DNA of 64,000 nt from Selaginella moellendorffii (GCF_000143415.4 NW_003314270.1:1915048-1979047); one strand, 5' to 3'. Positions 407 through 23,997 are shown, counted from the first letter of the stretch. Notes: generated by a model from the sequence alone, not told the origin. Made by a program: numbers and translations.

Positions 407-628
407 ATGGCTCAAGTTCATGCTGCGGAGTTGAAGGGCAATCAACAGGACCTCAGTCCTAAAAAGCGCATGGGCTGTTTTGGATGGAGGAGTAGCAGCA
501 ACAAGACCAGCAAGATCAAGCCCAAGAAGAACGCCCAAGTCTCAGATGGGAAGATCAAGGAGAGAAAACAAAAGCAAGCAATAATTGTTCCACACTTTGC
601 AACTTCAGCCAGATTGTCAATGCTGTGA
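407..628 (+). CDS. Small basic protein, 73 aa, type A of the local CFGW...AIIVPHF...RLSML family
   Basis: Intact ORF with AT-rich TATA-like boxes upstream (~254, ~316). Near-identical intact copies at 8806 and 23132. Shares CFGW and AI(I/V)VP(H/Y)F-x3-RL-x2-L motifs with the type B ORFs. Confidence 0.7.
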   Translation: MAQVHAAELKGNQQDLSPKKRMGCFGWRSSSNKTSKIKPKKNAQVSDGKIKERKQKQAIIVPHFATSARLSML

Positions 629-824
629 CATGGATTTGCACAGATTCAAGACTTTTTCCTTTTCGTCTTGAAGAAGCGAACTTGTAATATATTTTGTTTC
701 GTGAATTGAAATCATTCTATCAATTCAAAAAAATTTCTTCAATTGATCACAAAAATGCTTGTTGTGAAGAAGAAGAACTGAGAATGTGGAAAACTTCAGG
801 TTTTAGGGTTTCTACGGCCTAGGT

Positions 825-1176
825 ATGAACAAGGAGATGCAAGTGCGAAGGCGCATCGCGAGCATGTAAGCATCGCAAATGTCTCCTCCACTTTTCTCAA
901 TCGCTTGTGCGTGCCAGCTACAACAAGCGCGAGGACAATTTCGCGTCCCTCAGAGACTACAATGACTACCTGGAAGACGTAGAGGACATCAGTGAGCTCT
1001 CGTTTCATTCTCTCAGCTGCTCACTCACTTTGCCTTGTAGTCTTCAATCTGGTCCAAGGCATCGATGTGGCTGAGACGGAGGCCAAGATCAAGGCGTATA
1101 ATGAGGAAAACTACGAGCAAATCCTCGCATCCAGAGCTCGCAAGGTAAGGCGTGTTTTCGAGGAGAAACAAATCCT

Positions 1177-1224
<48 letters not shown>

Positions 1225-1583
1225 TACACACACAGGCTGTGGAGATTAGCACTGCTCTCCAGCAAGAGCAAGGCTTCACTGAAACGAGAGAAGCCATAGA
1301 ACAGGTAATCAGAAATTCTTTTCCATGATATTCCAGCGAGAATTTGGATCGAAAACAGGGACCGTCTGGAGCGTACGCGCCGGCAGTGGCGGGGATGTTG
1401 ATGCAGCAGCCAACGAGGCAGCCCGAGCCGATTGGACACAGCCTGCTCAACGGTGGCGCGGCCGAGGATCCAGAGGCGCAGAGGATTCGAGAGGAGCGAG
1501 CCGCCATCGCCGGGGGCTGGTCCATAGACTGCTGCCACAGGAGGGATCTCACGGAAGCTTTCTCCAGCTTGTGGGTCAACTAG
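825..1583 (+). CDS. MAT1: CDK-activating kinase assembly factor MAT1-like (plant short form), 5 exons
   Basis: Spliced translation MNKEMQVRRRIASI/YNKREDNFASLRDYNDYLEDVEDI/FNLVQGIDVAETEAKIKAYNEEN... matches the MAT1 centre domain. GT-AG introns at about 866-917, 992-1040, 1145-1235, 1305-1337. Stop at 1581-1583. Confidence 0.85.
1179..1233. repeat. (CT)n(CA)n microsatellite in MAT1 intron 3
   Basis: Directly visible. Shorter in the duplicate copies near 9370 and 23640. Confidence 0.95.
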
Positions 1584-1857
1584 AGACAAGAGAAGAACTG
1601 CTGCTCAATGGATGAAGTAGCAGTGTTCTTGAGAGCCGGCTCTCGTTGGATAGCCCCTGTTTCCATTTTTTCTTCAACTTTTCTACAACTTTTCTACAAC
1701 TTCTAGTAATTCTGTGCTCACAATACCACGTAGCCTTTCATTAGCTTAAAAAGCTGACAAAGGTGGAACCTACAGAACAGATCACAGAAAGTTCAAATAG
1801 CATACAACTTTCAAACTTACCACAGCTTTTTCTTTTGAACGTTTTTCTTTTAAACGT

Positions 1858-3059
1858 TCACTCTACCTTACTTCTCTGAAGGTAAACTGTCCCGCTCGCT
1901 CGTGGGCATTCCTTTGTTGTCACAACCAGCCTTATATAACTAGTGGAATACCATTCTTTGAGTTTGTGAGAGCCTTCTAAATTCACTTTCTTGTCCAGCT
2001 TCATGATGTCTAGCGTCACAAATGCTTGAGTTGCTCCTAAGTCACTTCTCGTTGTGAATTGTACAAACACAAGCATCTTCTTGTTCAGCTTACCATTCCA
2101 CAAGAAAAACATTGCCTTTGGTCCTGCTTCACAGAATGTCCCTGTCCAAGCATATGTTGTAAATGAAGCATCAGTCTCCACTGACTTGAGCCACTTGTTC
2201 AATTGTTTTGCATTTTTAATCTCCTTAACTAACACTACTGACAACCCTTTTCGTTTTAAAAAGTCATATGTTTTCTTGTACATAGCATGTGTTTCTACCA
2301 ATCCAAATAGCTCTGCTAGTACCTTCTTGTCAAATGTAAATCCAAAAGTCATGCATGTATATGTCTCAAAGTTGATTTTACATACAAATGAGTGTTTAAA
2401 TGTGTTTATAAAGCATCTCATGAGCATACTTTGTGGCATGTTATGCCATAGTGCATTTACCACCAAAGGCTCTCGCAAGATTATATAGTGAATTTCTACT
2501 GTAACTGACAAACTAGGAGTCTCTGTTTTATTATCAATAACACCTCTAATATATGGAGCTATTGGTGCAAAATGTTCTGCTCCATCACTGCTCTCAAGGA
2601 GAGTTGCAAAACCATGGTCTACAAGAGTCATGCCCCTCCATCCTGGTACAATCACATGGCACCTGAAAAAGTAATAAGTAAATATCACAATATCACGTAA
2701 TTCTATAAAGCTTGCGGTCTTACCTGAGAGATAGTAAGTAACTATCAGACCTTCTATAAAACTTGCCATCTCAGATTGTTCCACAGCAAAACTGCATCGT
2801 CTCTCAAAGAGCGATGGACTCCAAGTTCCCGGCCTGTTTGAGTGATCATCCTTCGTGCAAACTCCATGAACCAATCTGCAGCAGGTGCAGTCTCCATAAT
2901 ATACTTCTCAATAGCGGTTGATAAAAGTCTTCTCCTTCCTGTGTAGGTGGAGATAACAGCTGGCATGTCTAGTTGACTAACATCTATAAACCTTTCCATA
3001 AACACTTGGATGTTGCTACCATCAAAACCCAGGTAGACTGTAAATCTCTCCCACATCAA
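1858..3059 (-). pseudogene. Crinkler/CR-effector-like gene remnant (NTPase C-terminal part + PD-(D/E)xK-like nuclease domain), frameshifted and 5'-truncated
   Basis: ORFs 2754..3059 and 1858..2874 join by a frameshift. Motifs in order: YTGRRRLLSTAIEKYI, LVDHGFATL, LREPLVVNAL, GPKAMFFL, VFVQF, QAFVTLD, YIRLVV. This recalls the GR.RF / LV..GF / DEPLV / GPD..FF / VFVQ.K series of fungal CR-type proteins. Confidence 0.55.
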
Positions 3060-3072
3060 ACTCTTTCATAGT

Positions 3073-3540
3073 TGTTAGAGGTAGAGATGATGTGGCAGTT
3101 GTTATGCCCACGTGGCAGTAGCTTTATGTATATGTACACAATCATATACAGTTATATATATATATACAGTTCTTCCTCCTCGTGTGCGCGTCTCTCCGCT
3201 GCTAACATGGTATCGGAGCCCTGGGTTCCTTGATCCTGAGAATGGCGCTTGCTGGCCAGGAGGCCAGTGACGAGGAGGAGGATGAGCCTCCCGATTGCAA
3301 TCCCTCTTGCAATGTTTGGGACGCTTGAGGCGTTGCACCAAGGCACCAGGCTGTGTAAAGGTGCTGAGCAACAAGCAGCAGCAAGCAGAGAACAAAGCCA
3401 GTGGGAGATTGAGAGATTTCAACAACCCACATCAAGAATTGGGTCAAGATTCAAGAACATTGCATAGCAATTCTTTGCAGGAATTTCCAGCAATTGGGAA
3501 GGATGGAACGAGTGTCCGAGCAGAAGGGAACCTTGCCTTG
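3073..3540 (+). mobile_element. Ty1/Copia 5' end: 135-bp LTR, Met-tRNA PBS and decayed start of gag
   Basis: LTR TGTTAG(3073)...CTAACA(3207) with an internal TATA run, followed immediately by PBS TGGTATCGGAGCC (3208-3220). No second LTR seen. Confidence 0.75.
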
Positions 3541-3689
3541 TAACGTGACTCGTACTGTGCTACTGCCGGACGTTTGAGAGAGATATAAGCGTCACACGGA
3601 TGTGTAATGTCTGCTTCTGTAATATCTGTTTCTGCTGTTTTTGTAATGCCTGTTTCTGTAAACAATAAAATTGAAAAAAAAACAAGAAA

Positions 3690-4140
3690 CCAGTTAAACG
3701 CCACAGCATATGGCCACCTAAAGACAAATGCGCAGGGAGAGCAAGGGCAATGAGATCGTCCTCCTTCGATCGCCATAGGGGCTTTGGCGAAGAATTTCGC
3801 ATAAAGGAAAATTGGGGCAAGAAGTAGAAACCGAAGCCATCCTAAAAGAAAGTAGCATACCTCTCGTGGGACGAATGACATGAGAAGATCCAGCCCGAAA
3901 TTTCACTTTGCTGAGACCATCTTCTTTTCTTGGTTCAAGAGTTCTTCATCGGACCCTCATCACGGAGATGGAGTTAGCCGAGAACACCCTCTGAACCGCA
4001 TCTACGCCCACTCTACCATCACAAAGGTAAAATTCATGACTCTCTGCCCCATCTATGTCGTCAATGAACTCCACAAGCTCTTCCATTTCTGCCATAGCTT
4101 GCAACGAGTTTAGGGTACAACTCAAGGGGGAATGCTGGCC
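3690..4140 (+). mobile_element. Decayed LINE (L1-like) endonuclease fragment
   Basis: Remnant APE motifs: AYGH (VYAP-like), IG(D)F-like, FFSWFK...LNRIYAHS (FTW...LDRIY-like). Reverse-complement match to 20440-20725. Confidence 0.55.
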
Positions 4141-4299
4141 TCCATGCCACGTGTCATTGTCGAATGTCCATTTCACATCCATTCTTTATATGCCACGTAG
4201 GAATGGCCCATGCCATGTCAGGAATTAAGCCACTCACATAGACCATGTTGCGAACAAAATTGATCATGGTAGGCTTCTTTGCATTATGTTCTCACCTCT

Positions 4300-6495
4300 T
4301 GCTCTTATTGCACATGACAAAAGATGAAAAAAACTATCACTATGCAAGTTAGTGGTAACTTCCTTAATGAGAGTCTATTTGAATTGGCTTAAGCTTATCA
4401 ACTAAGCTAGCAAATGTCGTAATTAAAAGCTCAAAGAGTCTATTGAATGGGGAACTTAGATTGTATCCTAGCATTATTGTAAATTTGGGCAACTTTGGGC
4501 ATTCGAGAATAAAACCCCATTCATCCATGTCCATCATAAAATCTTCCATTTGTGGAAAAATGAGTTATATTGAAGAACTTGTTGGTATAAGCATTTTTAT
4601 TAGAGAGTTCTTTATAAGAGCGGCTTGATAGAGTTCAATATAGTAGAGAAAAAGTTTCTTAGCAAGGGGTTTAATCCTATTGAATTGTTACTCTTGAAAG
4701 GAACTTGGTGACACTCCAAGTTGTAGAACGTTGGGAGGACACCACAATAGATGTGGGGCAAGCCACATGCAAAAGCCATTAGAGAGGTTGATTGCAAAAT
4801 GTTTAAACAGTCCTCCTCTGTTAAATTGTCAATCATTCTCATTTAGAACTTTTTGCAATTGCTAATATTGCAATTATACACCCACAAGAGATTTGTGCAT
4901 TATATTTGAACACTTGGAATAGCAACTAACCCACAAAGTCAACTTATGCATACAGAAATAAAGACCATACCAAAGTTGTGTTTTAAACTTCACTTTCCTT
5001 GTCTTTTTGTCACAATGTCCTAAAATGCATTGGCATCTAGGGATGCCTTGCTGATTGTATAAGATGGACCTCAAGGCATGAGTTACATATTTAGAATGCA
5101 CTCAATTAACTGTGAGGTGCATTAGGTATAAAGGAGGAGGGTGATTGGTGTAAATCCATGGATTCCATCTTGGAGAATCCCAGCAATTATGACTATAATG
5201 TAATGTTTGAGTCTAGACTCACCAAACTTGGTGAAAGCTATAAATAAGCTATGGAAGCATCCATGGCTGCAATAGTGTGGCATTACCTATTCATAAAGCT
5301 AAAGGCAATGGAAAACCTATTGTAAGAAGGCTTGCAATACTCACTATGCATAGAAGCTCTATAGAGCCATTACAAGAGTTTAACATTATTAAGTGGGCTT
5401 TCACTCATTGGCATAAATGCTTTACTATAGATCTTTCTAGTAAAGATGATCATTCCTCTTGTGCAACTCATCAACTACCTAATCTTTGATTTGAACTTTG
5501 GAGAAAACTTCCACACCTAAGTTGTGGACATCATCCAAAGTAACTCTACATCTACTCTTACTAAAGTGAGGATGAGCTTTCAATCCCTGAAAACTCTAGT
5601 TCTTTGCCCTTAGCACATGGTATATATTGGATAGTTTAGCCCATGTTTGAAAATCCTTCTCACTCAATTCAAATATTAAAATGGTTATGTTTGGAAAAAT
5701 GATTGAAGTGTCCCTACTGTTGATCTTCTTGGCCAAACGTTATTGCACAAAATTGCAATCTCCTTAAGCATGCTATTCTTGAGAAGTAGTCAAGCCCAAC
5801 TCATATATGCCTTCAACAATTAGTGCACACCAGCCTAAAGTTAAGGAATCAGCCTCAATGTTGTAGCTTGGGTCTTACCATTCCCCTCAGTGTTGCCTAT
5901 GTCACACATGAATGAGCTCTTCACCAACACCATGCAAACTTGCATCCAAATACAAGCTCCACCATGTCATGGAATTGGTAAAGGTGTTTGTTGAAACTAA
6001 GACTATAATCAGGAAGATGAGCATGAAGTGAGGGGTTAGACACGGGACCATACAAAGTGTTCATAAACCCTATATAAAAGTTGCTATGGTTTGCTCTTTT
6101 GCCAAAGGAAAGTGCCTTTCATTGCAACATGAGCAATCAGTAGAATAATGATTCCTTTATCTTTAGCCTAGTTTGTGCCTCTAAGGTGTTAAAAGACCTA
6201 GATTGCAAATCAATGGCAAGGAAGGATAAACTCAATTGGCTGCATTGGGGGCACGACTCCAGATGCTATACATCCACAGCTTCGCAAAGGCATTTGTTGT
6301 CAAGAACACCATGTTAAAGAAGATAGTGTGCAAGAGAATGAAAATTTGGGGTGAGAACATTGTGCTCTAGAGAAGCTACATTTGGTTTGCAACATGTTGA
6401 ATGCATGGGATGTCTATGGGCCCGGCACTTTCCCCATACCCTAGCCTTGAGTGGTGCCCTAAACTCGGAGCTATGGATGGAAGAGCTTGTGGAGT
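4300..6495 (-). mobile_element. Degenerate L1-like LINE ORF2 (EN end, RT, zf-RVT remnants)
   Basis: Minus-strand remnants RD*KLILTLVRVDVELL (DWRPISL..DYK-like), LLERSIVKH, IGNATLL (FADDATL-like) and FILECPK. Many stops, CpG-depleted. Confidence 0.6.
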
Positions 6496-7030
6496 CTCCG
6501 TTATTCTTCCTCTCAGCTGTGAGCATCGCGGTGGATGCTTGGAGACTGGCCTTAACCGGGCGAGTTTAGTAGGGTGGTGCACGAGGATTTGAGCAATTAC
6601 GATCCAGAAGGTAGAGAAAACTTCGCCATTCGCATGCTCTGATCTAATTAACGTAGCTGCCGCTCCAGGCGCTTGGCCTGTTCTTGTCGTCGAGTTTGTG
6701 GATCACATGTACAGGTAACACACTGTAGTTCTCTTGCTGGAAAAGAATGGCCGTCCTCACAAAATCCTCCTGCTTTCAGAAGCTCGTCATGCTCTTGCAT
6801 TGCGGAAGCCTGCGTTTGCGATCCGAGTGCAGTGCTGAGCTCTTCGGAAGTTTTGGATGCTACCTCTCAATTGAACCGAGCGAATACACTACCAGGCAAG
6901 AAAACTCGCTACCAATATGATGCCTAAAGATCTATCTCTCTTCACAGGTATGGCTGCTACCGCCGGTAGTAAGAGGCGGAGGAAAGACGAACGACGAGGT
7001 GTTTTTGTCGCGGCATTTGAAGCGTCTACT
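6496..7030 (+). pseudogene. DCN1-like (AAR3-type) 3' gene fragment with internal deletion
   Basis: AVSIAVDAWRLALTGR...VVHEDLSNYDPE/GAWPVLVVEFVDHMY with introns retained. Lacks the ~90 bp present in the copy at 20725. Confidence 0.75.
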
Positions 7031-7302
7031 GCTGGAGAAACTTCTGCTCATGTCCTCCGGTGGATTTTGACAGATGAAAGCTTTGTAGTAGAGAAATTCT
7101 TTTCAATGTATAGTGGTGCCCAAGCGAGCGATGATTCTTTTTCCGCATAGTATTCTTGTGACCGAGAAACACGTGACAATAATGATCTAGACTCTATTCA
7201 AGTCAAAGTCTGGAGTCCTAACAACTCTCTATATTTCTTGGCTAGCAAGTTAGGACGAAGTATATAATGTGTGCCCTGAGAATTTCTTTCATTTGTTTTG
7301 GA

Positions 7303-7527
7303 ATGGCAGCAGGTGGAAACAGCATCAAGATGGACGAGCAACAAAAGGTTGCAAAGGTCGATTGTTTTGGATGGATGAGACAATGGAAATTCAAAGTAGC
7401 AAACAAGGTGGAGAATTCGCAAGATTGGAGCAAGACTATGGAAAGCAGCAGTGAGTCAAAGAAAAAGAAAAAGGATGCAATTGTCGTTCCTCACTTCTCT
7501 TCCTCGCCAAGACTTCCACTCCTGTAA
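7303..7527 (+). CDS. Small basic protein, ~74 aa, type B of the CFGW...AIVVPHF...RLPLL family
   Basis: TATATAA at 7261. ORF MAAGGNSIKMDEQQKVAKVDCFGWMRQWK...KKKKKDAIVVPHFSSSPRLPLL. Intact duplicate at 21752. Confidence 0.7.
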   Translation: MAAGGNSIKMDEQQKVAKVDCFGWMRQWKFKVANKVENSQDWSKTMESSSESKKKKKDAIVVPHFSSSPRLPLL

Positions 7528-7639
7528 TAGTAGAGAAAAGCTTCCAGATTGTTTGTTCTCCCTCCAAATATCTTCTCTGTTTTAAGATCTGGTACTCAGG
7601 ATAAGTTGGTCAAGCTAGGATGAATGAGCAGCATCGTAT

Positions 7640-8300
7640 CCATTTCCAGGACACTTCGTTTGCATGCCGAGTCATTTCTTGGTTTGCACGGAAAGTTTTT
7701 TGGACAAGGATTGAAATCAGGAATTCGCAGCAACAGAGCGTAGAAAATCTAATTCAGCCTTCACGCACGAAGACTATATCCTTTGTTCTCTCAAATTTGT
7801 GACTGGCTCAATGGAGTTAGTGCTTTGGATGGAGGAGTAGTCAACCCACAATCTGAGTCCTGTTGATTGCCCTCACAATATCCAGAAGCTCGTCGTTCTC
7901 TTGCATCGCGGAAGCCTTCCGAGTGCCGTGATGAGCTCTTCGGAAGTTTTGGATGCTACCTACCGAGAGGCAGAGGAAAGACACGAACGACGAGGTGTCT
8001 TTGTCGCGGCATTTGAAGCGTCTACTACTAGAGAAACCTCTGCTCATGGGTTTTGATAACAAGACAATAATATGAAGCGAATTTTTTTTCCACTGTTGTA
8101 ATCTAGACTCTATTCAAATACAAAACGATCATTGATTTTGGAATGGCAGCAGGAGTTCAAGGTGGAAACACGGACGAGCAACAAGAGGTTGCAACGAGAC
8201 AATGGAAATTGAAATAAGTAGCAAGCAATGTGAGCAAGACTATGAAAAGTAGCAGTGAGATGCAATTGTCACTTCTCTAGACTTCCACTCCTGTAATAGG
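7640..8300 (+). pseudogene. Collapsed remnants: type A promoter and 5' end, DCN1 fragment, type B pseudogene
   Basis: 7660-7760 parallels the type A upstream region. TGCTTTGGATGGAGGAGTAG at ~7821. DCN1 exon pieces at 7870-8048. Deleted type B copy at 8143-8298. Confidence 0.65.
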
Positions 8301-8805
8301 CTTCTAAATTTTTTATTTTTTGTAATGAAAATAAATCTGTCATCTTGAACATTTGAATCTGTTCTAAATTTTGGTAGTCCATTTCGTGTGAGGGATGTGA
8401 TCCTCCCAAAAGCATGGAAATTTAAGATATCTCGATTGAATACTGGACGTTAATCTTTTCAATCACATTAAAATTCCAATTAAAACTGTACGTGATAATT
8501 TTGCCCTTTGAAACTTTCAAGATATGTCATAACGTCACATCCCAACACATTCCAGGATACTTCATTTGCATGCCGAGTCTTTTGCTTGGTGTGCAAGGAA
8601 AGTCCCGTGGAAAGCTGGGATATAAAACACAGAGGATAGGAAGCTTCACCGTCAAGAATATAAAACATAGAGGATGGGAAGCTTCAGTGTCAAGAACTCG
8701 TAGCGACACAGTGTAGAAAATATAATTCCAGGCTCCAGGCTCCAGGCACCAAAGCAATTCTGCAAATTCTTCATTGTCGATTCTCCATATTGTGATTGGA
8801 AACCC

Positions 8806-9027
8806 ATGGCTCAAGTTCATGCTGCGGAGTTGAAGGGCAATCAACAGGACCTCAGTCCTAACAAGCGCATGGGTTGTTTTGGATGGAGGAGTAGCAGCAA
8901 CAAGACCAGCAAGATCAAGCCCAAGAAGAACGCCCAAGTCTCAGATGGGAAGATCAAGGAGAGAAAACAAGAACAAGCAATAATTGTTCCATACTTCGCG
9001 GCTTCAGCCAGATTGTCAATGCTGTGA
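8806..9027 (+). CDS. Small protein type A, copy 2 (73 aa)
   Basis: Intact ORF differing from 407..628 by a few residues (…IIVPYFAASARLSML). Confidence 0.7.
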   Translation: MAQVHAAELKGNQQDLSPNKRMGCFGWRSSSNKTSKIKPKKNAQVSDGKIKERKQEQAIIVPYFAASARLSML

Positions 9028-9199
9028 CATGGATTTGCACAGATTCAAGATTTTTTCCTTTTCGTCTTGAAGAAGCGAACTTGTAATATATTTTGTTGTT
9101 TCATGAATTGAAATCAGTCAAAAAAATCTCTTCAATTCATTCTCAATGATCACAAAAATGCTTGTTATCACTTCGCAGAAGAACTGAGAATGTGGAAAA

Positions 9200-9650
9200 C
9201 TTCAGGTTTGAGGACATCAGTGACATTCTCTCAGCCGCTCACTCACTTTGCCTGGTAGTCTTCAATCTGAGGCGAAGATCAAGGCGTATAATGAGGAAAA
9301 CTACAAGCAAATCCTCGCATCCAGAGCTTGCAAGGTAAGGCGTGTTTTCGAGGAGAAACAAATCCTTACTCTCTCTCTCTCTGTCTCACATACACACACA
9401 GGCTGTGGAGATTAGCATCCAGCAAGAGCAAGGCTTCACTGAAACGAGAAATTCTTTTCAATGGTATTCCAGCGAGAATTTGGATAAAAAACAGGGACCT
9501 TCTGGAGCGTACGCGCCGGCAGTGGCGGGTATGTTGATGCAGCAGCCAACGAGGCAGCCCGAGATTGGCTCAACGGTGGATCCAGAGACGCAGAGGATTC
9601 GAGAGTTGCGAGCCGCCATCGCCGGCAGGAACTAGGGACAAGCGCATGGA
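9200..9650 (+). pseudogene. MAT1 pseudogene
   Basis: Collinear with 825-1583 but exons 1-2 are largely deleted and there are several internal deletions. Confidence 0.85.
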
Positions 9651-9725
9651 TGAAGCTGATGGTTCTAGCTTAAAAGAGTGCTAGCAATTGGAACTAGAAA
9701 ATCCATATTAGGGCTTAAAATTTGG

Positions 9726-9885
9726 AGAGGGCCGCGCGTACGCGAGCCCTCAACTTCCACAAATTACGACGTCCACTCCTCCACTTTGGGAAGATGGTAG
9801 GCCGGCCAAGCCGTAGTGCAATGGGAAGGCCGAACCTAGGCCATTGACCTTCATGATCGCCAATAGACCCCGTCCAGGTAAGTAT
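9726..9885 (-). ncRNA. U1: U1 spliceosomal snRNA, copy 1
   Basis: Minus strand starts ATACTTACCTGG. Loop I GATCATGAAG, loop II ATTGCAC, Sm site AATTTGTGG, 3' GC hairpin. Confidence 0.95.
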
Positions 9886-9907
9886 GGATCCTTTCCCATA
9901 GCGCTGG

Positions 9908-9956
9908 GTTATATACTGCTCTTGTGCCCTTATTCCATTCCCCGGCATGTGGGATA
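9908..9956 (-). promoter_or_regulatory. Plant snRNA promoter (TATA ~-30, USE TCCCACATG ~-70) of U1 copy 1
   Basis: TATATAAC and ATCCCACATGC on the minus strand with Pol II-type spacing. Conserved before copies 2 and 3. Confidence 0.85.
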
Positions 9957-11320: not shown

Positions 11321-11806
11321 TTAACATGGTTTTGTGCAGTGAATCGGCGATGATGGCACTGAATCCAGCCGGCCTGCAATTGTGTTACGAGTTGGAGGAG
11401 GGCCTGGAATGATCTTTCCATTTGAAGGAGTTCCAGATCTCACAGCTTGTTTGGTGTCAATGCTTGGAGGAGATCCATTTTCGAATGCACTAACGTGTTT
11501 TGGTCCTGGGTGGATAGGCGAGCTCCTCCGTTTGATCACTGCTGGGAGTATACTTTCTTTATTCACTGCTGGGTGTATAGGCGAGCTCTTTCCTTTGAGC
11601 ACTGTTGTCGCTACCGGGATCTCGAGATTGTAAGCCTGCGAGAGCTGGACCGTGAAATCCTGCAAGAGTTTACGATGATGCCGTGCTCCTGCTTCATCAG
11701 CAGAAGAAACGAGAGAAGCAGCGGAAGCTCCAACTTGTTCCTGGTGGATCTCTCCAGCCAGGAGCAGCAGCAGCAGCAGCAGCTGGAAGATCAGACGAGT
11801 CTCCAT
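11321..11806 (-). CDS. Secreted Pro/Ser-rich peptide-precursor-like protein, 161 aa, with repeated SSPIH motifs
   Basis: Signal peptide (METRLIFQLLLLLLLLAG), RKLL motif, three SSPIH motifs, intronless, TATA-like TGTATAAAA at ~11995. Confidence 0.7.
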   Translation of the reverse strand: METRLIFQLLLLLLLLAGEIHQEQVGASAASLVSSADEAGARHHRKLLQDFTVQLSQAYNLEIPVATTVLKGKSSPIHPAVNKESILPAVIKRRSSPIHPGPKHVSAFENGSPPSIDTKQAVRSGTPSNGKIIPGPPPTRNTIAGRLDSVPSSPIHCTKPC

Positions 11807-13607: not shown

Positions 13608-13987
13608 TTAACATGTTTTCGTTTTATTGACGCAATGAATCTGTGGCCTTGAATGCAGCCAGCCTGCAAATGTGTTACGAGTTGGAGGAGGGCCTGGAAC
13701 GATCTTTCCATTTGAAGGAGTTCCAGATCTCACAGCTTGTTTGGTGCCAATGCTTGGAGGAGATCCATTTTCGAATGCACTAACGTGTTTTGGTCCTGGG
13801 TGGATAGGCGAGCTCCTCCGTTTGATCACTGCTGGGAGTATAGGTGAGCTCTTTCCTTTGAGCACTGTTGTCACCACCGGGATCTCGAGATTGTAAGTCT
13901 GCGAGAGTTGGACCATGGAATCCTGCAAGAATTTATGATGATGCAGTGCTCGTGCTTCATAAGCAGAAGAAACGAGAGAAGCAGCAG
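13608..13987 (-). pseudogene. Truncated duplicate of the SSPIH peptide precursor
   Basis: Collinear with 11321-11720 but lacks the signal peptide exon sequence and one repeat, and has a frameshift near the RKLL motif. The 3' flank 13245-13600 duplicates 10915-11300. Confidence 0.75.
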
Positions 13988-14012
13988 GTTTAATCTCTTA
14001 TCTCCTCTTTGC

Positions 14013-14105
14013 AGGGAATGTCCTCCGAAGCTCAAGGGGGCCATCGCCAGTTTGATTTATGCTGGACCAAGGTGTCCTGATTTGGCAGAGTTGCTAGAGA
14101 TACAA
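14013..14105 (+). pseudogene. IST1-like (Vps4 regulator) single-exon fragment
   Basis: After a TTTGCAG acceptor: ECPPKLKGAIASLIYAGPRCPDLAELLEI, matching the plant IST1-like motif. Confidence 0.65.
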
Positions 14106-14667
14106 TTGATTTTGTATCTCACATCACCTCCAAAAGGTTGGTTTTTTGGCCGTGGATAAACCAGCATTTTAAACTAACATCCTGATGTTGGTTTGGAACG
14201 TTGGTTTCATACATGGTCACTCTTGGTTTTTAAGCAATTAAAACTATTTGTGTTTTGGAAGGACAAAAATGGGGTGGTTTTATTGCATGTTTAGTTTCTC
14301 ATTTACAAGGAAAGGATCAACTTTTGAGGGGACAACCTTTTGGATTCTTTTGAGTTGATTTTTATGCCTCAACTTGTTGATACATTGTTTTATACCATAT
14401 TCATATTGGTTTATGGGATTTTACATTAGTTTATAAATGGATCTTTGTGTTAATTATTAGAAATGATTTTTGATTGAGTTTCAATTTGCATTTAGAACCA
14501 TTAGAAAAGGTCAAAATTATGTCATAAATTATTTTCCTTGTTTTTAAGAAGTTTTTAAAAATTGGATGCTTTATTAAGCTTGTTTTTGCATTGACGTCTC
14601 ACAAGAGGGCATTGTCACAACTTGGGGTCTACTGGAAGATACATCTTATAGGGCTTACAATTCGGAG

Positions 14668-14780
14668 CATACGCGAGCCCTCAACTTCCACAAATTATGA
14701 CGTCCACTCCTCCACTTTGGGAAGATGGCAGGCTTCTTTATCCATAGGACAATTACAACGTTCACTCCTCCAGTTTGGGA
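14668..14780 (-). pseudogene. U1 snRNA pseudogene fragments (3' half only, partly doubled)
   Basis: Stem III/Sm region present. 5' splice-site-binding end, stems I-II and most of the promoter are absent. Confidence 0.8.
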
Positions 14781-14845
14781 CGGCCAGTGCTTAATAGAGT
14801 AAATATAGTCATTCCACGCTTGGGAGGATATCCTTCGGTCAAAGA

Positions 14846-16342: not shown

Positions 16343-16451
16343 AGCTCAAGAAACTTTCGAAGCCGCAAACTCTCTCGATCATGAAGATACTTCAATCGTT
16401 CGCAAACATGACGAGCAAAAGGCACACACAAACAATGCATCACTGAGACTT

Positions 16452-16524
16452 CGCCGACCGTGGGGTTCGAACCCACGACCACAAGGTTAAGAGCCTTGCG
16501 CTCTACCAGCTGAGCTAGGCCGGC
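16452..16524 (-). tRNA. tRNA-Lys(CTT)
   Basis: GCCGGCCTAGCTCAGCTGGTAGAGCGCAAGGCTCTTAACCTTGTGGTCGTGGGTTCGAACCCCACGGTCGGCG folds as a cloverleaf with anticodon CTT. Confidence 0.95.
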
Positions 16525-16555
16525 TAATATTAATGGTTTCATAGCAAGAGCTTTT

Positions 16556-16740
16556 CGGTAATTGAAAGCAGGGATGGTCGCATTAGTTCGAGTGTCAACT
16601 CTCGTAAGTTGCTTAGAAAACCTGACATGGTAGATCTTGCAGGCTCAGAGCGTATTGGAGCTGGTGGTGTTCGACTCGAAGACGGGACGCACAAACAAAT
16701 CCGACACTTGGAACTGTTATCAGCAAGCTAAGTGACGGTT
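16556..16740 (+). pseudogene. Kinesin-7 fragment copied from 26881-27130
   Basis: GGTAATTGAAAGCAGGGA…GTGTCAACTCTCGTAAGT…GTAGATCTTGCAGGCTC, with multiple deletions. Confidence 0.85.
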
Positions 16741-16919
16741 TTTTGTGTGGAGAAATGTGCGCGGCTATCGATCGGGCACTCCAAGATCTACCAGGTACAA
16801 TGTAGCAGTCAAGGATCGGAGCAAGTTCGTCTAGCTCCGTCGCGAACAAGCTCAAGGTAATTTTCTTCCTTTCGTAGGCTGACAAGCTACAAATCCAAAG
16901 CGAGTTACGATTTTTTTCT

Positions 16920-17430
16920 CTCTCCGATTTGTGTCCCACCCAAAGCTTAAACGCTTCCACAGCGCGTCTTCTCTCGGCCGTGTTGGCCTTCCTGTGCTTG
17001 CTGGTGTAGAGATTCGCGTAGAGCTCCACGTACAATCGCTTGTACTTGGCCTTGGCTCTCCCCGGGTGGCTTCCCTGCCGATCCATGCAGTCCACCACCT
17101 GGAGCGCGAGCTGAGAGTATCCTCCTCGCACGAACGACACCACTGATCGAGGGTTTATCTCTTTGCAGAGAAGGATGTAGTCCTCAACTTGCATGTCCAA
17201 AAACGTACTTCGTCACAAAATGCTTAGCCATGGAACTGGCCGCGTTGCTTCTCTCGTCTCCATCAAAGGATTCGTACATGGTGTCCATTTTCCCTGGCCG
17301 TGAGAAAATCATAGAAGTCATTTCGTCTTTGTCGTAGATGGGATTCACTCGCTTCTTGATGTCCCTAAGATCACTGCCCCGCTCCGAGAATCTGGGAAGT
17401 GTGCGACAACCAATCCGGCACAAAAGCACA
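16920..17430 (-). pseudogene. P-class PPR gene 3' fragment (At4g17616-like C-terminus)
   Basis: SFVRGGYSQLALQVVDCM…KYKRLYVELYANLY…RRRAVEAFKLWVG, frameshifted and truncated. Confidence 0.55.
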
Positions 17431-17587
17431 GCCCCATGCCCCAGTCCACTCTTAGAGCAAACCGGAATTATTTAAAATGAGATATATTTAGCATGTAGAT
17501 TAAGTTTTATACAAAGGCAGGATATAAAACGCAGAAGAAAATCTACTAATTCTGCAATTGTGCAACCATTTTGTAATTTGGAAACAC

Positions 17588-18090
17588 ATGGCTCAGGTTC
17601 ATGCCAAGGGTAATCAACAGCATCGCAGTTCCAACAATCTGCTTTGGATGGCAACAATACCAACAAGATCAAGCCTGGCCAAGGAGTAAAAACAACAACA
17701 ATAACTTTGCGGCTTCAGCCAGATTGTCAATGTGTGTTATTTGCACACCTTCAATTCTGCTCAATGACAAATGGTTGATATCTCACGCAAATCTGGTTTT
17801 CTTTTCTTATTCACACGGAGAAGGGTTTTTTGCGGCCTACAACAAGCACGAGGGGATTTTCCGACTATCTGGATAGAGGACTCTCGTTTGATTCTCGGGT
17901 TGCTCGCTGTAGTCTTCAATCTGGTCCAAGGGATACCATGGAAAATAATTTTTTCTCACCTGTTCCGTTTCAGTGAAAATACGGACCTACGCGCCAGCAG
18001 TTGATGCAGCAGCCCGCAAGGCAGCCCGAGCCGATTGACAGAGTCTGCTCAACGGTAGTGCGGCCGAGGAGATGATTCGAGAGGACCGCA
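17588..18090 (+). pseudogene. Strongly deleted type A small-protein copy plus MAT1 remnants
   Basis: ATGGCTCAGGTTCATGC…TGCTTTGGATGG…TTTGCGGCTTCAGCCAGATTGTCAATG, followed by MAT1 pieces (CTACAACAAGC.., GTCTTCAATCTGGTCCAAGG, GATGCAGCAGCC). Confidence 0.75.
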
Positions 18091-18609
18091 CAGAATGGCC
18101 TTTCTAGAACGTCTATAGATCAAAGATTGCTCCGCCTGTTTCACTCTCTCTCAAGGACTTACATGGCATTTGTATATTTCCACTCCCGTCGGCATCCGTC
18201 CGTCAAACGACTGTGGTCTTTTTGGCACTCTTTTGACCGGCACACTCCCATCCGGCTACATTTTTCTTTGACTGGCACACTCCCATTTGACTACATTTTC
18301 TCTTGTTGTGGGAGTTCTTGGTGGAGACGGTGCACGTTGGTGCCGGAAGATAGTTGGAGGATGTAGATGTGTATAAAACCAAATGGGCTTTTCTGGTAGC
18401 TCTTGATTGTTTCAAATCGGCATGTGATTTAGCATCGAAAGATTTCTACAGGTGAGAAGGCTCACTAGCACCACATTTTCAAGCAATTCAGCAAAGCAAT
18501 TTTGTTTCTGTGCGTAGAATCCCAACTACCTATAGCCAAATTTGCACAAGCTACGTTAAAGAAACACAAACCGTGTTAAAGATAGACATCTTAGATATTT
18601 TTAATTCGG

Positions 18610-18769
18610 AGAGGGCCGCGCGTACGCGAGCCCTCAACTTCCACAAATTACGACGTCCACTCCTCCACTTTGGGAAGATGGTAAGCCGGCCAAGCCGTAG
18701 TGCAATGGGAAGGCCGTACCTAGGCCATTGGCCTTCATGATCACCAATAGACCCCGTCCAGGTAAGTAT
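18610..18769 (-). ncRNA. U1: U1 snRNA, copy 2
   Basis: All U1 motifs intact. TATA ~18795, USE ~18830-18839. Confidence 0.95.
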
Positions 18770-18869
18770 GGATTACTTCCATAGGCCCTATGCTATATAC
18801 TGCTCTTGTGCCCTCATTCTGCGCCTCGGCATGTGGGATAGGGCAAAGATCCGGTGCAGCGTATCCTTT

Positions 18870-19550
18870 GGTCAAAGACCTAACCTGTCAAACGGTCAAC
18901 ATCTTTAGTCCATGCGGTGCTCGGATCTTACACCCGTCGCTTCCGTCAACGGAACGTCAAGGAGTGCCGGTGGCCCGGCATGGCCACGAACGGTATCGCA
19001 GTATCTGGTAGGGTTTGTTCCTCGTCAGCAGTGTGAGCAGCGCAGTAGTGCTCCACGCTCAGCCCCATGTCGCGGAGTTCTACTGGAGCCGAGAATGCCG
19101 TAAGAACCGATGAGAGGACCATGGTGCACGCGTCCATGATCGACATCCAGGTGATGGTGCGCCTACACCATGTTGCATGCTTCAACAGTCACTCAGATCA
19201 AATTGTCAAATATACCCCCTACTCATCTCGGGCATCAAGTTGGCGGCCTTGATGCACTTGGCAAGAAGACTTGGCAGCGATGGAATCCGATGGTGGCAAT
19301 GAGCAGCAGGCTGCGGCATCCAGTTGTAGATCTTGCTCGCCTCCGCCACCTTGCCATAGCCGGCGTAGCCCGCCATCATCTGGATCCACCACCAGGACTT
19401 TGCCCGAGGGAGAGACGAGAACATCCGCCTGGCGTCCTCCAAATGCACGTGGGCCTCGAAGATCACCCGGTATGCCACCTCGTTCCTTGGGTGGCAAATG
19501 GCACCCCAGTTTCCAAACGCCGCGTCGCAGAATATCTGCCTCACCTGCAT
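18870..19550 (-). pseudogene. Deleted copy of the 498-aa PLS-PPR
   Basis: Blocks collinear with 14846-16185, with large deletions and frameshifts. Confidence 0.85.
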
Positions 19551-20724
19551 CACTCACAAAAGGTATCCTCATTTTTTTAAGGGATAGCTAAATGATTTTC
19601 ATCACTCACAAAACCTTTTTCACTCAATTCAAATATTAAAATGGTTACGTTTGGAAAAGTGATTGAAGTGTCCACTACTGTTGATCTTCTTGGCCAAACG
19701 TTATTGCACAAAATTGCAATCTCCTTAAGCATGCTATTCTTGAGTAGTAGTCAAGCCCAACTCATATATGCCTTCAACAATTAGTGCACACCAGCCTAAA
19801 GTTAAGGAATCAGCCTCAATGTTGTAGCTTGGGTCTTACCATTCCCCTCAGTGTTGCCTATGTCACACATGAATGAGCTCTTCACCAACACCATGCAAAC
19901 TTGCATCCAAATACAAGCTCCACCATTCATGGAATTGGTAAAGGTGTTTGTTGAAACTGGGACTATAATCAGGAAGATGAGCATGAAGTGAGGGGTTAGA
20001 CACCATTAACCTGGGACCATCTATAGAGAAGTTGCTATTGTTTGTTCTTTTGCCAAAGGAAAGTGCCTTTCATTGTAACATGAGCAATCAGTAGAATAAC
20101 ATTCATAATGATTCTTTATCTTTAGCCTAGTTTGTGCAAATCTTTGTGAACATCTTCCTCTAAAGTGTTAAAAGACCTAGATTGCAAATCAATAGGATAT
20201 ACTCAATTGGCTGCATTGGGGGCACGACAGATGTTATACATCCACAGCTTCACAAAGGCATTTGTTGTCAAGGACACCATGTTAAGGAAGATAGTGTGCA
20301 AGAGAATGAAAATTTGGTTCTTTTGTCATGTGCGATAAGAGCAAAAGGTGAGAACATTGTGCTCTAGAGAAGCTACATTTGGTTTGCAACATGTTGAATG
20401 CATGGGATGTCTATGGGCCCAGGAATCAATTCGGCACTTTCCCCTAAACTCAGAGCTATGAAGAAATGGAAGAGCTTGTGTTCATTGAAGACATAGATGG
20501 GGCAGAGGGTCATGAATTTTACCTTTTCTGATGGTAGAGTGGACGTAGATTCTGCGGGTGTTCTCGGCTAACTCCATCTCTGTGAAGTGCGAGGAGCCAC
20601 CAACGGTCCGATGGAGAACTCTTGAACCAAGAAAAGAAGATGGTCTCAGCAAAGTGAAATTTCGAGCTGGATCTTCCAATGTCATTCGTCCCACAAGAGG
20701 TATGCTACTTTCTTTTAGGATGGC

Positions 20725-21530
20725 TCAATGTGAATGCTCTCGCCAGTGAGAATAGTCACGCTGAACCCCTCGCAATTTGCTGCAGCTCTTAGATGCTCGC
20801 CGGTTTGGATGCCGGGAAAAAGCCTCAGTAAGTGTTGTGTTGTTGCCTGCTGCTGGATGGTTTCTCACTCCGTTATTCTTCCTCTCAGCTGTGAGCATCG
20901 CGGTGGATGCTTGGAAGCTGGCCTTAACCGGGCGTTTCAGGCTGATCGGCCAGTGGTGTGAGTTTGTGCGAATGCACCATCGCCATGCTATTACCGAAGA
21001 TACCTGGCGACAAGTCCTGGAGTTTAGTAGGGTGGTGCACGAGGATTTGAGCAATTACGATCCAGAAGGTAGAGAAACTTCGCCCTTCGCGTGCTCTGGT
21101 CTAACTAACGTAGCTGCCGCCCCAGGTGCTTGGCCTGTTCTTGTCGACGAGTTTGTGGATCACATGTACAGGTAACACACGATAGTTCTCTTGCTGGAAA
21201 AGAATGGCCGTCCTCACAAAATCCTCCTGCCTTCAGAAGCTCGTCATGCTCTTGCATTGCGGAAGCCTGCGCTTGCGATACGAGTGCAGTGCTGAGCTCT
21301 TCGGAAGTTTTGGATGCTACCTCTCAATTGAACCGAGCGAATACACTACCAGGCAAGAAAACTCGCTACCACTATGATGTCTACAGATCTATCTCTCTTC
21401 ACAGGTATGGCTGCTACCGCCGGTAGTAAGAGGCGAAGGAAAGACACGAACGACGAGGTGTCTTTGTCGCGGCATTTGAAGCGTCTACTGCTGGAGAAAC
21501 CTCTGCTCATGTCCTCCGGTGGGTTTTGAC
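20725..21530 (+). pseudogene. DCN1-like (AAR3-type) 3' gene fragment
   Basis: DAWKLALTGRFRLIGQWCEFVRMHHRHAITEDTWRQVLEFSRVVHEDLSNYDPEGAWPVLVDEFVDHMY is the cullin-binding domain C-terminus. The 5' part is replaced by LINE sequence. Confidence 0.8.
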
Positions 21531-21751
21531 AGATGAAAGCTGTGTAGTAGAGAAATTCTTTTCAATGTACAAGCGAGCGATGATTCTTTTTCCGCATAGC
21601 ATTCGTGTGACCGAGAAACACGTGACAATAATGATCTAGACTCTATTCAAGTCAAAGTCTGGAGTCCTAACAACTCTCTATATTTCTTGGCTAGCAAGTT
21701 AGGACGAAGTATATAATGTGTGCCCTGAGAATTTCTTTCATTTGTTTTGGA

Positions 21752-21976
21752 ATGGCAGCAGGTGGAAACAGCATCAAGATGGACGAGCAACAAAAGGTTG
21801 CAAAGGTCGATTGTTTTGGATGGATGAGACAATGGAAATTCAAAGTAGCAAGCAAGGTGGAGAATTCGCAAGATTGGAGCAAGACTATGGAAAGCAGCAG
21901 TGAGTCAAAGAAAAAGAAAAAGGATGCAATTGTCGTTCCTCACTTCTCTTCCTCGCCAAGACTTCCACTCCTGTAA
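21752..21976 (+). CDS. Small protein type B, copy 2
   Basis: Intact ORF, one amino acid change (N>S) versus 7303..7527. Confidence 0.7.
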   Translation: MAAGGNSIKMDEQQKVAKVDCFGWMRQWKFKVASKVENSQDWSKTMESSSESKKKKKDAIVVPHFSSSPRLPLL

Positions 21977-23131
21977 TAGTAGAGAAAAGCTTCCAAATTG
22001 TTTGTTCTCCCTCCAAATATCTTCTCTGTTTTAAGATCTGGTACTCAGGATAAGTTGGTCAAGCTAGGATGAATGAGCAGCATCGTATCCATTTCCAGGA
22101 CACTTCGTTTGCATGCCGAGTCATTTCTTGGTTTGCACGGAAAGTTTTTTGGACAAGGATTGAAATCAGGAATTCGCAGCAACAGAGCGTAGAAAATCTA
22201 ATTCAGCCTTCACGCACGAAGACTATATCCTTTCTTCTCTCCAATTTGTGACTGGCTCAATGGAGTTAGTGCTTTGGATGGAGGAGTAGTCAACCCACAA
22301 TCTGAGTCCTGTTGATTGCCCTCACAATATCCAGAAGCTCGTCGTTCTCTTGCATCGCGGAAGCCTTCCGAGTGCCGTGATGAGCTCTTCGGAAGTTTTG
22401 GATGCTACCTACCGAGAGGCAGAGGAAAGACACGAACGACGAGGTGTCTTTGTCGCGGCATTTGAAGCGTCTACTACTAGAGAAACCTCTGCTCATGGGT
22501 TTTGATAACAAGACAATAATATGAAGCGAATTTTTTTTTCCACTGTTGTAATCTAGACTCTATTCAAATACAAAACGATCATTGATTTTGGAATGGCAGC
22601 AGGAGTTCAAGGTGGAAATACGGACGAGCAACAAGAGGTTGCAACGAGACAATGGAAATTGAAAGAAGTAGCAAGCAATGTGAGCAAGACTAGAAAATAA
22701 ATCTGTCATCTTGAACATTTGAATCTGTTCTAAATTTTGGTAGTCCATTCGTGTGAGGGATGTGATCCTCCCAAAAGCATGGAAATTTAAGATATGTCGA
22801 TTGAATACTGGACGTTAATCTTTTCAATCACATTAAAATTCCAATTAAAACTGTACGTGATAATTTTGCCCTTTGAAACTTTCAAGATATGTCATAACGT
22901 CACATCCCAACACATTCCAGGACACTTCATTTGCATGCCGAGTCTTTTGCTTGGTGTGCAAGGAAAGTCCCGTGGAAAGCTGGGATATAAAACACAGAGG
23001 ATAGGAAGCTTCACCGTCAAGAACTCGTAGCGACACAGTGTAGAAAATATAATTCCAGGCTCCAGGCACCAAGTCCATAACAATTCTGCAAATTCTTCAT
23101 TGTCGATTCTCCATATTGTGATTGGAAACCC

Positions 23132-23353
23132 ATGGCTCAAGTTCATGTTGCGGAGTTGAAGGGCAATCAACAGGAGCTCAGTCCTAACAAGCGCATGGGC
23201 TGTTTTGGATGGAGGAGTAGCAGCAACAAGACCAGCAAGATCAAGCCCAAGAAGAATGCCCAAGTCTCAGATGGGAAGATCAAGGAGAGAAAACAAGAAC
23301 AAGCAATAATTGTTCCATACTTTGCGGCTTCAGCCAGATTGTCAATGCTGTGA
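23132..23353 (+). CDS. Small protein type A, copy 3 (73 aa)
   Basis: Intact ORF, two substitutions versus the 8806 copy. Confidence 0.7.
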   Translation: MAQVHVAELKGNQQELSPNKRMGCFGWRSSSNKTSKIKPKKNAQVSDGKIKERKQEQAIIVPYFAASARLSML

Positions 23354-23935: not shown

Positions 23936-23997
23936 AAGCAGCAAGCTAATGGACACAATATTGATCCATTAGATCCATCTTAGGTCTTAGAATTTGG

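What the first reader, a model, noticed from the sequence alone, without database searches (positions are those of the whole stretch)
407..23353. Birth-and-death array of an uncharacterised small-protein family (CFGW … AI(I/V)VP(H/Y)F-x3-RL-x2-L*)
Seen: five intact ~73-aa ORFs of two types (A: 407, 8806, 23132; B: 7303, 21752) and about five decayed copies (~7805, 8143, 17588, 22254, 22593). Types A and B are unalignable except for a central CFGW and a C-terminal Lys-rich + AI.VP(H/Y)F...RL..L box, the pattern expected from selection on two short linear motifs. These ORFs stay intact while neighbouring MAT1, DCN1 and PPR copies are deleted. There is no signal peptide. Type A ends -SML, a known minor plant PTS1 tripeptide; type B ends -PLL, which is not. 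Inference: an intracellular microprotein family with a C-terminal active motif, possibly split between compartments, with the Cys as a possible S-acylation site.
Basis: partly seen in the sequence, partly recalled or inferred. Interest (0 to 1): 0.75.

Follow-up and report, generated by a model that had tools for sequence, protein, structure and literature searches.

The report
Orphan mini-genes beside spikemoss MAT1
Two related reading frames of about 73 codons, so far seen only in the spikemoss Selaginella moellendorffii, look like real but tiny protein genes next to the cell-cycle gene MAT1; most of the "array" is recent block duplication, and the peptides' function is still inferred.

Summary
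There are five intact ORFs of 73-74 codons: type A at 407, 8806 and 23132, and type B at 7303 and 21752. There are five decayed copies. The genome is Selaginella moellendorffii.

The "birth-and-death array" is mostly passive. A copies differ by 2-4% and B copies by 0.4%, and they sit in segmental duplications whose flanks are just as similar.

The evidence that the ORFs code for protein comes from comparing A with B. Both stay open from a shared ATGGC start to a shared stop, although about half of the aligned bases differ. In the C-terminal 16 codons the differences fall 7/0/10 by codon position, and dN/dS is about 0.12. A younger released copy (17588) already carries six deletions.

No family, fold or homologue was found outside this species. 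The only database hits are three Selaginella gene models that splice the first 70 residues of A onto MAT1. AlphaFold predicts disorder. The peptides are very basic (pI 9.7-10.7).

Best reading (about 0.5): independent, TATA-promoted microprotein genes that act through two short motifs. Main rival (about 0.2): A is a leader cistron of MAT1, resembling a class I conserved-peptide uORF, since its stop lies 196 nt before the MAT1 ATG.

No transcript data could be reached. This scan found the same family earlier on another piece of this genome (s1-405362).

The parts
407..628 (+). Type A ORF, copy 1 (73 aa); its stop lies 196 nt before the ATG of the only intact MAT1 in the window
   Evidence: first ATG after a TATA-like box at 254-260
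8806..9027 (+). Type A ORF, copy 2. It is identical to residues 1-70 of gene model EFJ31028.1 (SELMODRAFT_408886), which splices it onto MAT1 remnants
23132..23353 (+). Type A ORF, copy 3
7303..7527 (+). Type B ORF, copy 1 (74 aa); TATATAA at 7261-7267, 42 nt before the ATG
21752..21976 (+). Type B ORF, copy 2 (one substitution relative to copy 1)
7811..7872 (+). Truncated type A remnant: ATG, CFGW codons, a stop, then a short inverted piece. It ends at the junction with the next tandem unit
8143..8296 (+). Decayed type B remnant (CFGW, Lys run and VPHF codons deleted; stops present)
22260..22324 (+). Truncated type A remnant, the copy of 7811-7872 in the second large block
22593..22746 (+). 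Decayed type B remnant, the copy of 8143-8296 in the second large block
17588..17735 (+). Older decayed type A copy with six deletions. It keeps the TATAAAA box (17523-17529) and is followed by a MAT1 remnant
254..260 (+). TATA-like box upstream of A1. Equivalents lie at 8621/8659 (A2, duplicated), 22986 (A3) and 17523 (old decayed copy)
   Evidence: conserved in the old copy
825..1583 (+). Intact MAT1 gene (exon 1 825-866; stop 1581-1583) immediately downstream of A1. MAT1 remnants lacking exon 1 follow A2 (9210-9635) and A3 (23499-23956)
6776..6927 (+). Inferred last exon and stop of the DCN1-like gene upstream of B1; a partial duplicate lies at 7883-8048
   Evidence: reading; repeats; Cullin_binding domain in the sister copy

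Best explanation
A and B are two anciently diverged paralogues of a small protein-coding gene restricted, as far as can be seen, to Selaginella moellendorffii. Each probably has its own TATA-type promoter. The product is an ~8-kDa, very basic (pI 9.7-10.7), intrinsically disordered peptide.

Selection has acted on the amino-acid sequence of two short linear motifs. These are CFGW near residue 25 and the last 16 residues, A-I-(I/V)-V-P-(H/Y)-F-x3-R-L-x2-L-stop, preceded by a Lys-rich run.

The ancestral arrangement was DCN1 - B - A - MAT1. This unit was duplicated in tandem, and one B and one A were kept. Larger blocks (A-MAT1-U1 snRNA-PPR-tRNA, and DCN1-B-psiA-psiB-A) were then duplicated recently, which accounts for most of the copies.

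Shown: the ORFs, their homology, the protein-level constraint and the duplication history.

Inferred: the peptides are made from their own short transcripts and act in trans. The polybasic run plus the hydrophobic C-terminal box would serve as a docking element for a partner protein or an acidic membrane surface.
For: 1. Between A and B, 103 of 198 aligned bases differ, yet both frames stay open from a shared ATGGC start to an aligned stop. The chance that a 73-codon frame is open at this base composition is 0.017.
2. In the unambiguous, ungapped C-terminal box the 17 differences fall 7/0/10 on codon positions 1/2/3. Ten residues are identical, five of them through synonymous codons. pN is 0.22 and pS 0.70, giving dN/dS of about 0.12. 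The other two phases give only 3-4 identities in 15.
3. Internal control: the released copies decay quickly. psiA at 17588 has six deletions, and psiB lost three motif-coding segments.
4. Among A1-A3 there are no indels in the ORF against 11 events in 632 flank columns (P about 0.02). Pairwise dN/dS is 0.15-0.48.
5. A TATAAAA or TATATAA box lies upstream of every intact copy and of the old A remnant. It is absent upstream of the psiA and psiB remnants and of MAT1. The ORF ATG is the first ATG after the expected start site.
6. After the tandem duplication the B copy that survived is the distal one. It has no intact cistron downstream for more than 1.2 kb, while the B copy next to A-MAT1 decayed. 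This fits a trans-acting product better than a cis-acting leader.
7. AlphaFold gives pLDDT 60, pTM 0.13 and no secondary structure, as expected for a peptide that works through linear motifs.
Against: There is no homologue outside one species. That search sees only annotated or called proteins, so constraint is measured between paralogues only.

Substitution density in the A ORFs equals that of their flanks. The recent copies may therefore be under relaxed selection.

One A copy elsewhere in the genome has Trp in place of the Cys.

Only 196 nt separate the A stop from the MAT1 ATG. This leaves little room for a separate 3' end and a MAT1 promoter.

The TATA box of B would give a leader of only about 10 nt.

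The docking or membrane mechanism rests on composition alone.
Confidence: 0.5

Rival explanations
1. A, and ancestrally B as well, is a cis-acting leader cistron of the MAT1 mRNA. It would resemble a class I conserved-peptide uORF: the nascent C-terminal box stalls the ribosome at the fixed stop codon and so sets how much MAT1 (a CAK/TFIIH subunit) is translated.
For: Every A copy lies directly 5' of a MAT1 copy on the same strand. This covers four copies in the window and two more on other scaffolds. In the intact copy the A stop is 196 nt before the MAT1 ATG.

The conservation pattern, a C-terminal block of 16 residues containing Pro plus a fixed stop position, is the published definition of class I CPuORFs. 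In those, the critical C-terminal region is 12-26 residues long (PMC4330380).

No TATA-like box lies between A and MAT1.
Against: All A-MAT1 pairs descend from one arrangement, so the linkage counts as one observation.

B has no main ORF downstream, and it was the B copy proximal to A-MAT1 that decayed.

CFGW lies about 47 residues before the stop, beyond the roughly 30-40 residues usually taken to fit the exit tunnel (general knowledge, not tested here).

A leader starting at the A promoter would be about 530 nt long. It would hold a 73-codon uORF plus three more uATGs at 630, 755 and 784, which is very repressive for a housekeeping gene.

Neither MAT1 nor Selaginella is mentioned in the one CPuORF paper checked for them.

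Conservation across taxa, which defines CPuORFs, could not be shown.
Confidence: 0.2
2. A is an alternative first coding exon of MAT1, as in public gene models SELMODRAFT_408886, _404242 and _428018. It would be spliced from a donor at its 3' end onto MAT1 exon 2, and the 'stop' would then lie inside an intron.
For: Three annotated proteins begin with A residues 1-70 and continue into MAT1 sequence.

Both candidate donors in A (ATT|GTCAAT and GCT|GTGACA) leave phase 2. This matches the phase of MAT1 exon 2 (sequence reading).

B ends with a similar CCT|GTAATA.
Against: The candidate donors lack both G at -1 and G at +5. The four real MAT1 donors read here are GTAAGC, GTGAGC, GTAAGG and GTAATC.

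The models are automatic predictions. One is built on a MAT1 pseudogene lacking exon 1 (window copy 2), and another reads the last MAT1 exon in a wrong frame.

Pfam's MAT1 match starts only at residue 81 of P0003.

The native MAT1 start at 825 is preceded by an in-frame stop in the intact copy.

B has no MAT1 exon within reach.

I did not build a joined A-MAT1 or spliced MAT1 sequence; the exons were examined only by reference.
Confidence: 0.07
3. The frames are no longer functional or never were: relics of a former small gene, now drifting inside duplicated intergenic DNA.
For: Substitution density in the A ORFs equals that of the flanks.

Thirteen of 70 positions vary among five A copies, including the Cys and the H/Y of the box.

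No annotation as a separate gene, no homologue in other species, and low language-model 'recognition' (1257 and 1319 against 2300 for most known families).
Against: The A-versus-B comparison requires long protein-level constraint on both lineages.

Released copies in the same DNA lose their frame quickly through deletions. The five intact copies have no indel at all.

One intact A and one intact B were kept after the tandem duplication.
Confidence: 0.15
4. One reading: type A is sent to peroxisomes by its SML> terminus while type B stays elsewhere, and the Cys is S-acylated.
For: SML> is an experimentally validated, weak plant PTS1 tripeptide and PLL> is not listed (PMC3427985 Table A1). No acidic residue lies at -6 to -4.
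Against: The tripeptide is not the conserved part of the box.

Weak tripeptides depend on upstream context with basic residues at -6 and -4 and a nonpolar residue at -5 (PMC9542071). Type A has A-R-L there.

The Cys is replaced by Trp in one copy.

Nothing was tested experimentally.
Confidence: 0.06

Closest known systems
Class I conserved-peptide upstream ORFs (CPuORFs) of plants, as defined in PMC4330380
   Same: A short ORF on the same strand, just 5' of a conserved gene. [quoted passage not shown]
   Different: Conservation is shown only between paralogues in one species. B has no main ORF downstream. At 73 codons with a second conserved motif far from the stop, the ORF would be unusual. 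No evidence was obtained that it shares a transcript with MAT1.
Taxon-restricted small-ORF (microprotein) genes of plants in general
   Same: Under 100 codons, no recognisable domain, disordered, restricted to one lineage, and missed or mis-joined by genome annotation.
   Different: Here two deeply diverged paralogues give internal evidence of protein-level selection, which most candidate small ORFs lack. Expression is unproven.
Public gene models EFJ31028.1, EFJ35916.1 and EFJ09494.1 (UniProt D8RA94, D8QUQ6, D8T1G1) of S. moellendorffii
   Same: They contain residues 1-70 of type A. EFJ31028.1 is window copy 2 exactly.
   Different: They treat A as a MAT1 first exon through a weak donor. They are not described as a family, and type B is in no annotated protein.
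IGT/LAZY family (a lead from memory plus PMC8513883)
   Same: A Trp-containing motif in the N-terminal part and a short conserved motif at the very C-terminus, with basic disordered sequence between. Region I with its conserved Trp, and the 14-residue C-terminal CCL, are described as essential.
   Different: The family-defining region II (IGT motif) is absent. The C-terminal boxes could not be compared, because no LAZY sequence was available through the tools. There is no Pfam or HMMER link. This is a resemblance in layout only.

Membership tests
Class I CPuORF | C-terminal peptide sequence and stop-codon position conserved | tested here: met
   A against B: 10 of 16 final residues are identical, the stops align, and dN/dS is about 0.12. 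The comparison is between paralogues only.
Class I CPuORF | Lies in the 5' leader of the mRNA of a downstream main ORF | not testable with these tools
   The geometry fits for A (196 nt before the MAT1 ATG). It does not fit for B, which has no intact ORF downstream.
Class I CPuORF | Peptide conserved among orthologous genes of different taxa | tested here: inconclusive
   A HMMER profile search of 1.84 billion representative proteins found only three S. moellendorffii models. Unannotated leaders of other plants cannot be searched here.
PTS1-targeted peroxisomal proteins | C-terminal tripeptide from the validated plant PTS1 set | tested here: inconclusive
   A ends in SML>, which is listed. B ends in PLL>, which is not (PMC3427985 Table A1). 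The tripeptide is not conserved within the family.
PTS1-targeted peroxisomal proteins | For weak tripeptides, an enhancing pattern at -6 to -4 (basic, nonpolar, basic) | tested here: not met
   Type A has A-R-L at -6 to -4. The rule comes from PMC9542071.
MAT1 (as an N-terminal exon of the protein) | Covered by the MAT1 family profile, or homologous to MAT1 N-termini | tested here: not met
   The Pfam MAT1 match in P0003 starts at residue 81. The A peptides alone give no hit.
MAT1 (as an N-terminal exon of the protein) | A usable splice donor at the end of A, in phase with MAT1 exon 2 | tested here: inconclusive
   The phase fits. However, the donors lack both -1 G and +5 G, unlike the four real MAT1 donors (reading). 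No junction reads were available.
IGT/LAZY | Region II IGT motif | tested here: not met
   No such motif in the A or B alignment. No Pfam or HMMER link.
N-myristoylated or S-acylated membrane anchors | Met-Gly-Cys at the translated N-terminus, or an invariant acylatable Cys | tested here: not met
   M-G-C occurs only internally (Met22) in A and is absent in B. The Cys is Trp in SELMODRAFT_428018.

The most novel reading that the evidence does not exclude
Type A is a nascent-peptide arrest cistron, of the class I CPuORF kind, that gates translation of MAT1. This would make assembly of the CDK-activating kinase/TFIIH module a translationally controlled step in a lycophyte. Type B would be a paralogue that escaped from the leader and became a free-standing microprotein gene, a rare visible case of a uORF peptide turning into a gene or the reverse.
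Probability: 0.15. Interest if true: 0.55.

Novelty: new member of a known kind. Interest (0 to 1): 0.3.

Why it matters
If the peptides are made, this is a clean example of a lineage-restricted microprotein family. Its two deeply diverged paralogues give built-in evidence of selection on short linear motifs. That would make it a good test case for small-ORF annotation in early vascular plants.

It also flags three public Selaginella gene models that probably mis-join this ORF to MAT1.

If the cis reading is right, it would add MAT1 to the short list of plant genes controlled by arrest peptides.

As it stands the finding is modest: one species, no expression data and no function.

Tried and rejected
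- Pfam scan of all five peptides: only sub-threshold chance hits to NUP210 Ig and DUF1246.
- Word-index protein search with A1 and with the A+B alignment: nothing found, not even the query itself.
- ESM Atlas for A and B: no usable hit.
- PDB sequence profile search: nothing.
- AlphaFold: no fold, so no fold search was run.
- Rfam on 1-25000: no RNA family overlaps the ORFs.
- Antisense ORFs overlapping A and B (101-538, 8527-8937, 22892-23263, 7198-7422, all minus strand): no family hits; taken as chance.
- Fourth HMMER hit, P0004, an ENA tandem-repeat protein: 52 bits summed over eight weak repeats of one unit; rejected as a repeat artefact.
- 'VPHLSSNA' matches at 52067 and 54542: chance matches inside a longer unrelated ORF.
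- Paper searches for Selaginella small ORFs and for a uORF in Arabidopsis MAT1 (AT4G30820): nothing relevant.
- No plant genome or transcriptome collection is searchable with these tools, so tblastn across land plants was not possible.


Full report
**What is there.**
- Type A (73 aa) is intact at 407-628, 8806-9027 and 23132-23353.
- Type B (74 aa) is intact at 7303-7527 and 21752-21976.
- Decayed pieces lie at 7811-7872 and about 22260-22324. These are A copies truncated after the CFGW codons, with a stop and a small inverted segment.
- Further decayed pieces lie at 8143-8296 and 22593-22746. These are B copies that have lost the CFGW, Lys-run and VPHF codons and carry stops.
- The last decayed piece is an A copy at 17588-17735 with six deletions.

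A and B are 35-36% identical, with 21 invariant columns. B against A gives E = 4.5e-6. No other copy lies in the remaining 40 kb.

**Whose genome.**
A HMMER profile of A+B was run against 1.84 billion representative proteins. It found three real hits, all gene models of Selaginella moellendorffii: EFJ31028.1, EFJ35916.1 and EFJ09494.1. EFJ31028.1 is window copy 2 exactly.

All three models use the first 70 residues of A as a first exon joined to MAT1 sequence. Type B occurs in no annotated protein. The fourth hit is an ENA tandem-repeat protein whose score is the sum of eight weak repeats; I treat it as an artefact.

**The array is mostly passive duplication.**
Self-comparison shows the following blocks.
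- 5650-9989 matches 19610-24261 at 85-97% identity.
- 1-1513 matches 8368-9625 and 22734-23914.
- An older copy lies at 17535-18100.

Reading the sequence gives one unit in this order:
1. DCN1 last exon
2. B
3. an upstream segment
4. A
5. MAT1

That unit was duplicated in tandem into (DCN1 end - B - truncated A) followed by (partial DCN1 end - decayed B - A - MAT1). The larger blocks, which also carry a U1 snRNA gene, a PPR gene and a tRNA, were then copied.

A three-way alignment of the A loci shows that the flanks are as similar as the ORF:

| Region | Variable columns |
|---|---|
| ORF | 4.95% |
| Upstream flank | 5.0% |
| Downstream flank | 3.5% |

The survival of A2, A3 and B2 therefore says little by itself. 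Two weak signals remain. The ORF has no indel, against 11 events in 632 flank columns (3.9 expected, P about 0.02). Pairwise dN/dS among A copies is 0.15-0.48, resting on only 5-9 changes per pair.

MAT1 in copies 2 and 3 has lost exon 1 and part of exon 2. Only the MAT1 at 825-1583 is intact.

**Why I take the frames to be coding.**
The informative comparison is A against B.
- About half of the aligned bases differ (103 of 198). Yet both frames run from a shared ATGGC start to an aligned stop.
- A random 73-codon frame is open with probability 0.017 at this base composition.
- In the ungapped C-terminal box the 17 differences fall 7/0/10 on codon positions 1/2/3. The chance that any one of the three phases is empty is about 0.003.
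- Ten of the 16 box residues are identical, five of them through different codons. pN is 0.22 and pS 0.70. The other two phases give only 3-4 identities in 15.
- The released copies serve as a control. They lose the frame through deletions well before reaching this divergence.

Both lineages have therefore been under protein-level selection for most of their history, strongest on CFGW and the last 16 residues.

**What the peptide looks like.**
- It has no family, fold or solved relative.
- AlphaFold gives pLDDT 60, pTM 0.13 and no secondary structure.
- The peptides are about 8 kDa, with pI 9.7-10.7.
- A Lys-rich run sits directly before the hydrophobic box.
- There is no hydrophobic N-terminus.
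- The Cys of CFGW is Trp in one copy elsewhere in the genome.

**How it may work.**
Three readings compete.

*1. Independent microprotein genes (my best reading, about 0.5).*
- A TATAAAA or TATATAA box lies upstream of every intact copy and of the old A remnant. None lies upstream of the psiA and psiB remnants or of MAT1.
- The ORF ATG is the first ATG after the expected transcription start.
- After the tandem duplication the surviving B is the distal copy, with nothing to regulate downstream. The B next to A-MAT1 decayed.

The mechanism, a disordered basic peptide that docks through its C-terminal box to a partner or an acidic membrane, is inferred from composition only.

*2. A leader cistron of MAT1 (about 0.2).*
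- The A stop is 196 nt before the MAT1 ATG in every lineage of copies.
- A conserved C-terminus with a fixed stop is the published definition of class I CPuORFs, whose critical region is 12-26 residues long (PMC4330380).
- Against this: B has no main ORF downstream.
- Against this: such a leader would be about 530 nt long, with a 73-codon uORF and three more uATGs.
- Against this: all the A-MAT1 pairs descend from one ancestral arrangement.

*3. An alternative first exon of MAT1, as in the public models (about 0.07).*
- The phase fits MAT1 exon 2.
- The candidate donors lack both -1 G and +5 G, unlike the four real MAT1 donors visible.
- One of the models sits on a MAT1 pseudogene.

A further reading, that the frames are now relics, gets about 0.15.

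But the tripeptide is not the conserved part of the box. The -6 to -4 context also does not match the enhancing pattern (PMC9542071).

**Limits.**
- "Only in S. moellendorffii" therefore means only among annotated or called proteins.
- Expression is untested.

**Earlier work in this scan.**
Finding s1-405362 describes the same family on another piece of this genome. It reads it as an orphan small-ORF pair beside MAT1. My independent tests agree with that reading. They add the codon-position test, the duplication map, the gene-model fusions and the argument from which B copy survived.

**Verdict.**
This is a real feature that very likely codes for protein, and a lineage-restricted microprotein or leader-peptide family. 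The array is ordinary segmental duplication. Function is unknown beyond motif-level inference. Interest is modest (0.3).

Noticed in passing
window 9725-9885, 18609-18769, 23997-24157 (all -); 16452-16524 and 24794-24866 (-): Three full-length U1 snRNA genes (134-138 bits) and two tRNA genes are carried inside the duplicated blocks, each U1 just downstream of a MAT1 remnant.
   Followed up: no
window 11321-11806 (-) and 13608-13928 (-): A 161-aa ORF with a Leu-rich, signal-peptide-like N-terminus and three S-S-P-I-H motifs has a partial paralogue 2.3 kb away. It may belong to the secreted repeat-peptide family noted 33 kb upstream of this window (s1-339344).
   Followed up: no
window 8621-8665: In A copy 2 a 38-bp tandem duplication doubles the TATA-like box upstream of the ORF.
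   Followed up: partly
window 476-488 and 7363-7375: The 13 bases TGTTTTGGATGGA, which encode CFGW, are identical in A and B with no synonymous change, whereas half of the conserved residues in the C-terminal box use different codons. With three degenerate codons this is not significant (about 1 in 8). A nucleotide-level constraint is not excluded.
   Followed up: partly
window 605-616 and 7504-7515: The conserved S-(A/P)-R-L inside the box contains ARL and PRL. Both are validated PTS1 tripeptides in PMC3427985 Table A1, but they lie three residues before the end.
   Followed up: no
window 6500-6720 versus 20960-21175: The DCN1-like copy upstream of B1 lacks about 100 bp of the Cullin_binding region that the sister copy retains. 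At most one of the two DCN1 copies is therefore intact.
   Followed up: partly
proteins P0004-P0012 (ENA metagenome contigs of 5.8 and 10.7 kb): Tandem-repeat proteins with a 58-residue unit that echoes the spacing W...SNKT...(30 residues)...V-x-P-H-F-A-A-S of type A. The score is inflated by repetition and the origin is unknown.
   Followed up: partly
window 1858-2874 (-): A 338-aa ORF with no Pfam hit. Another first-stage note (s1-402920) calls it a Crinkler-type remnant.
   Followed up: no
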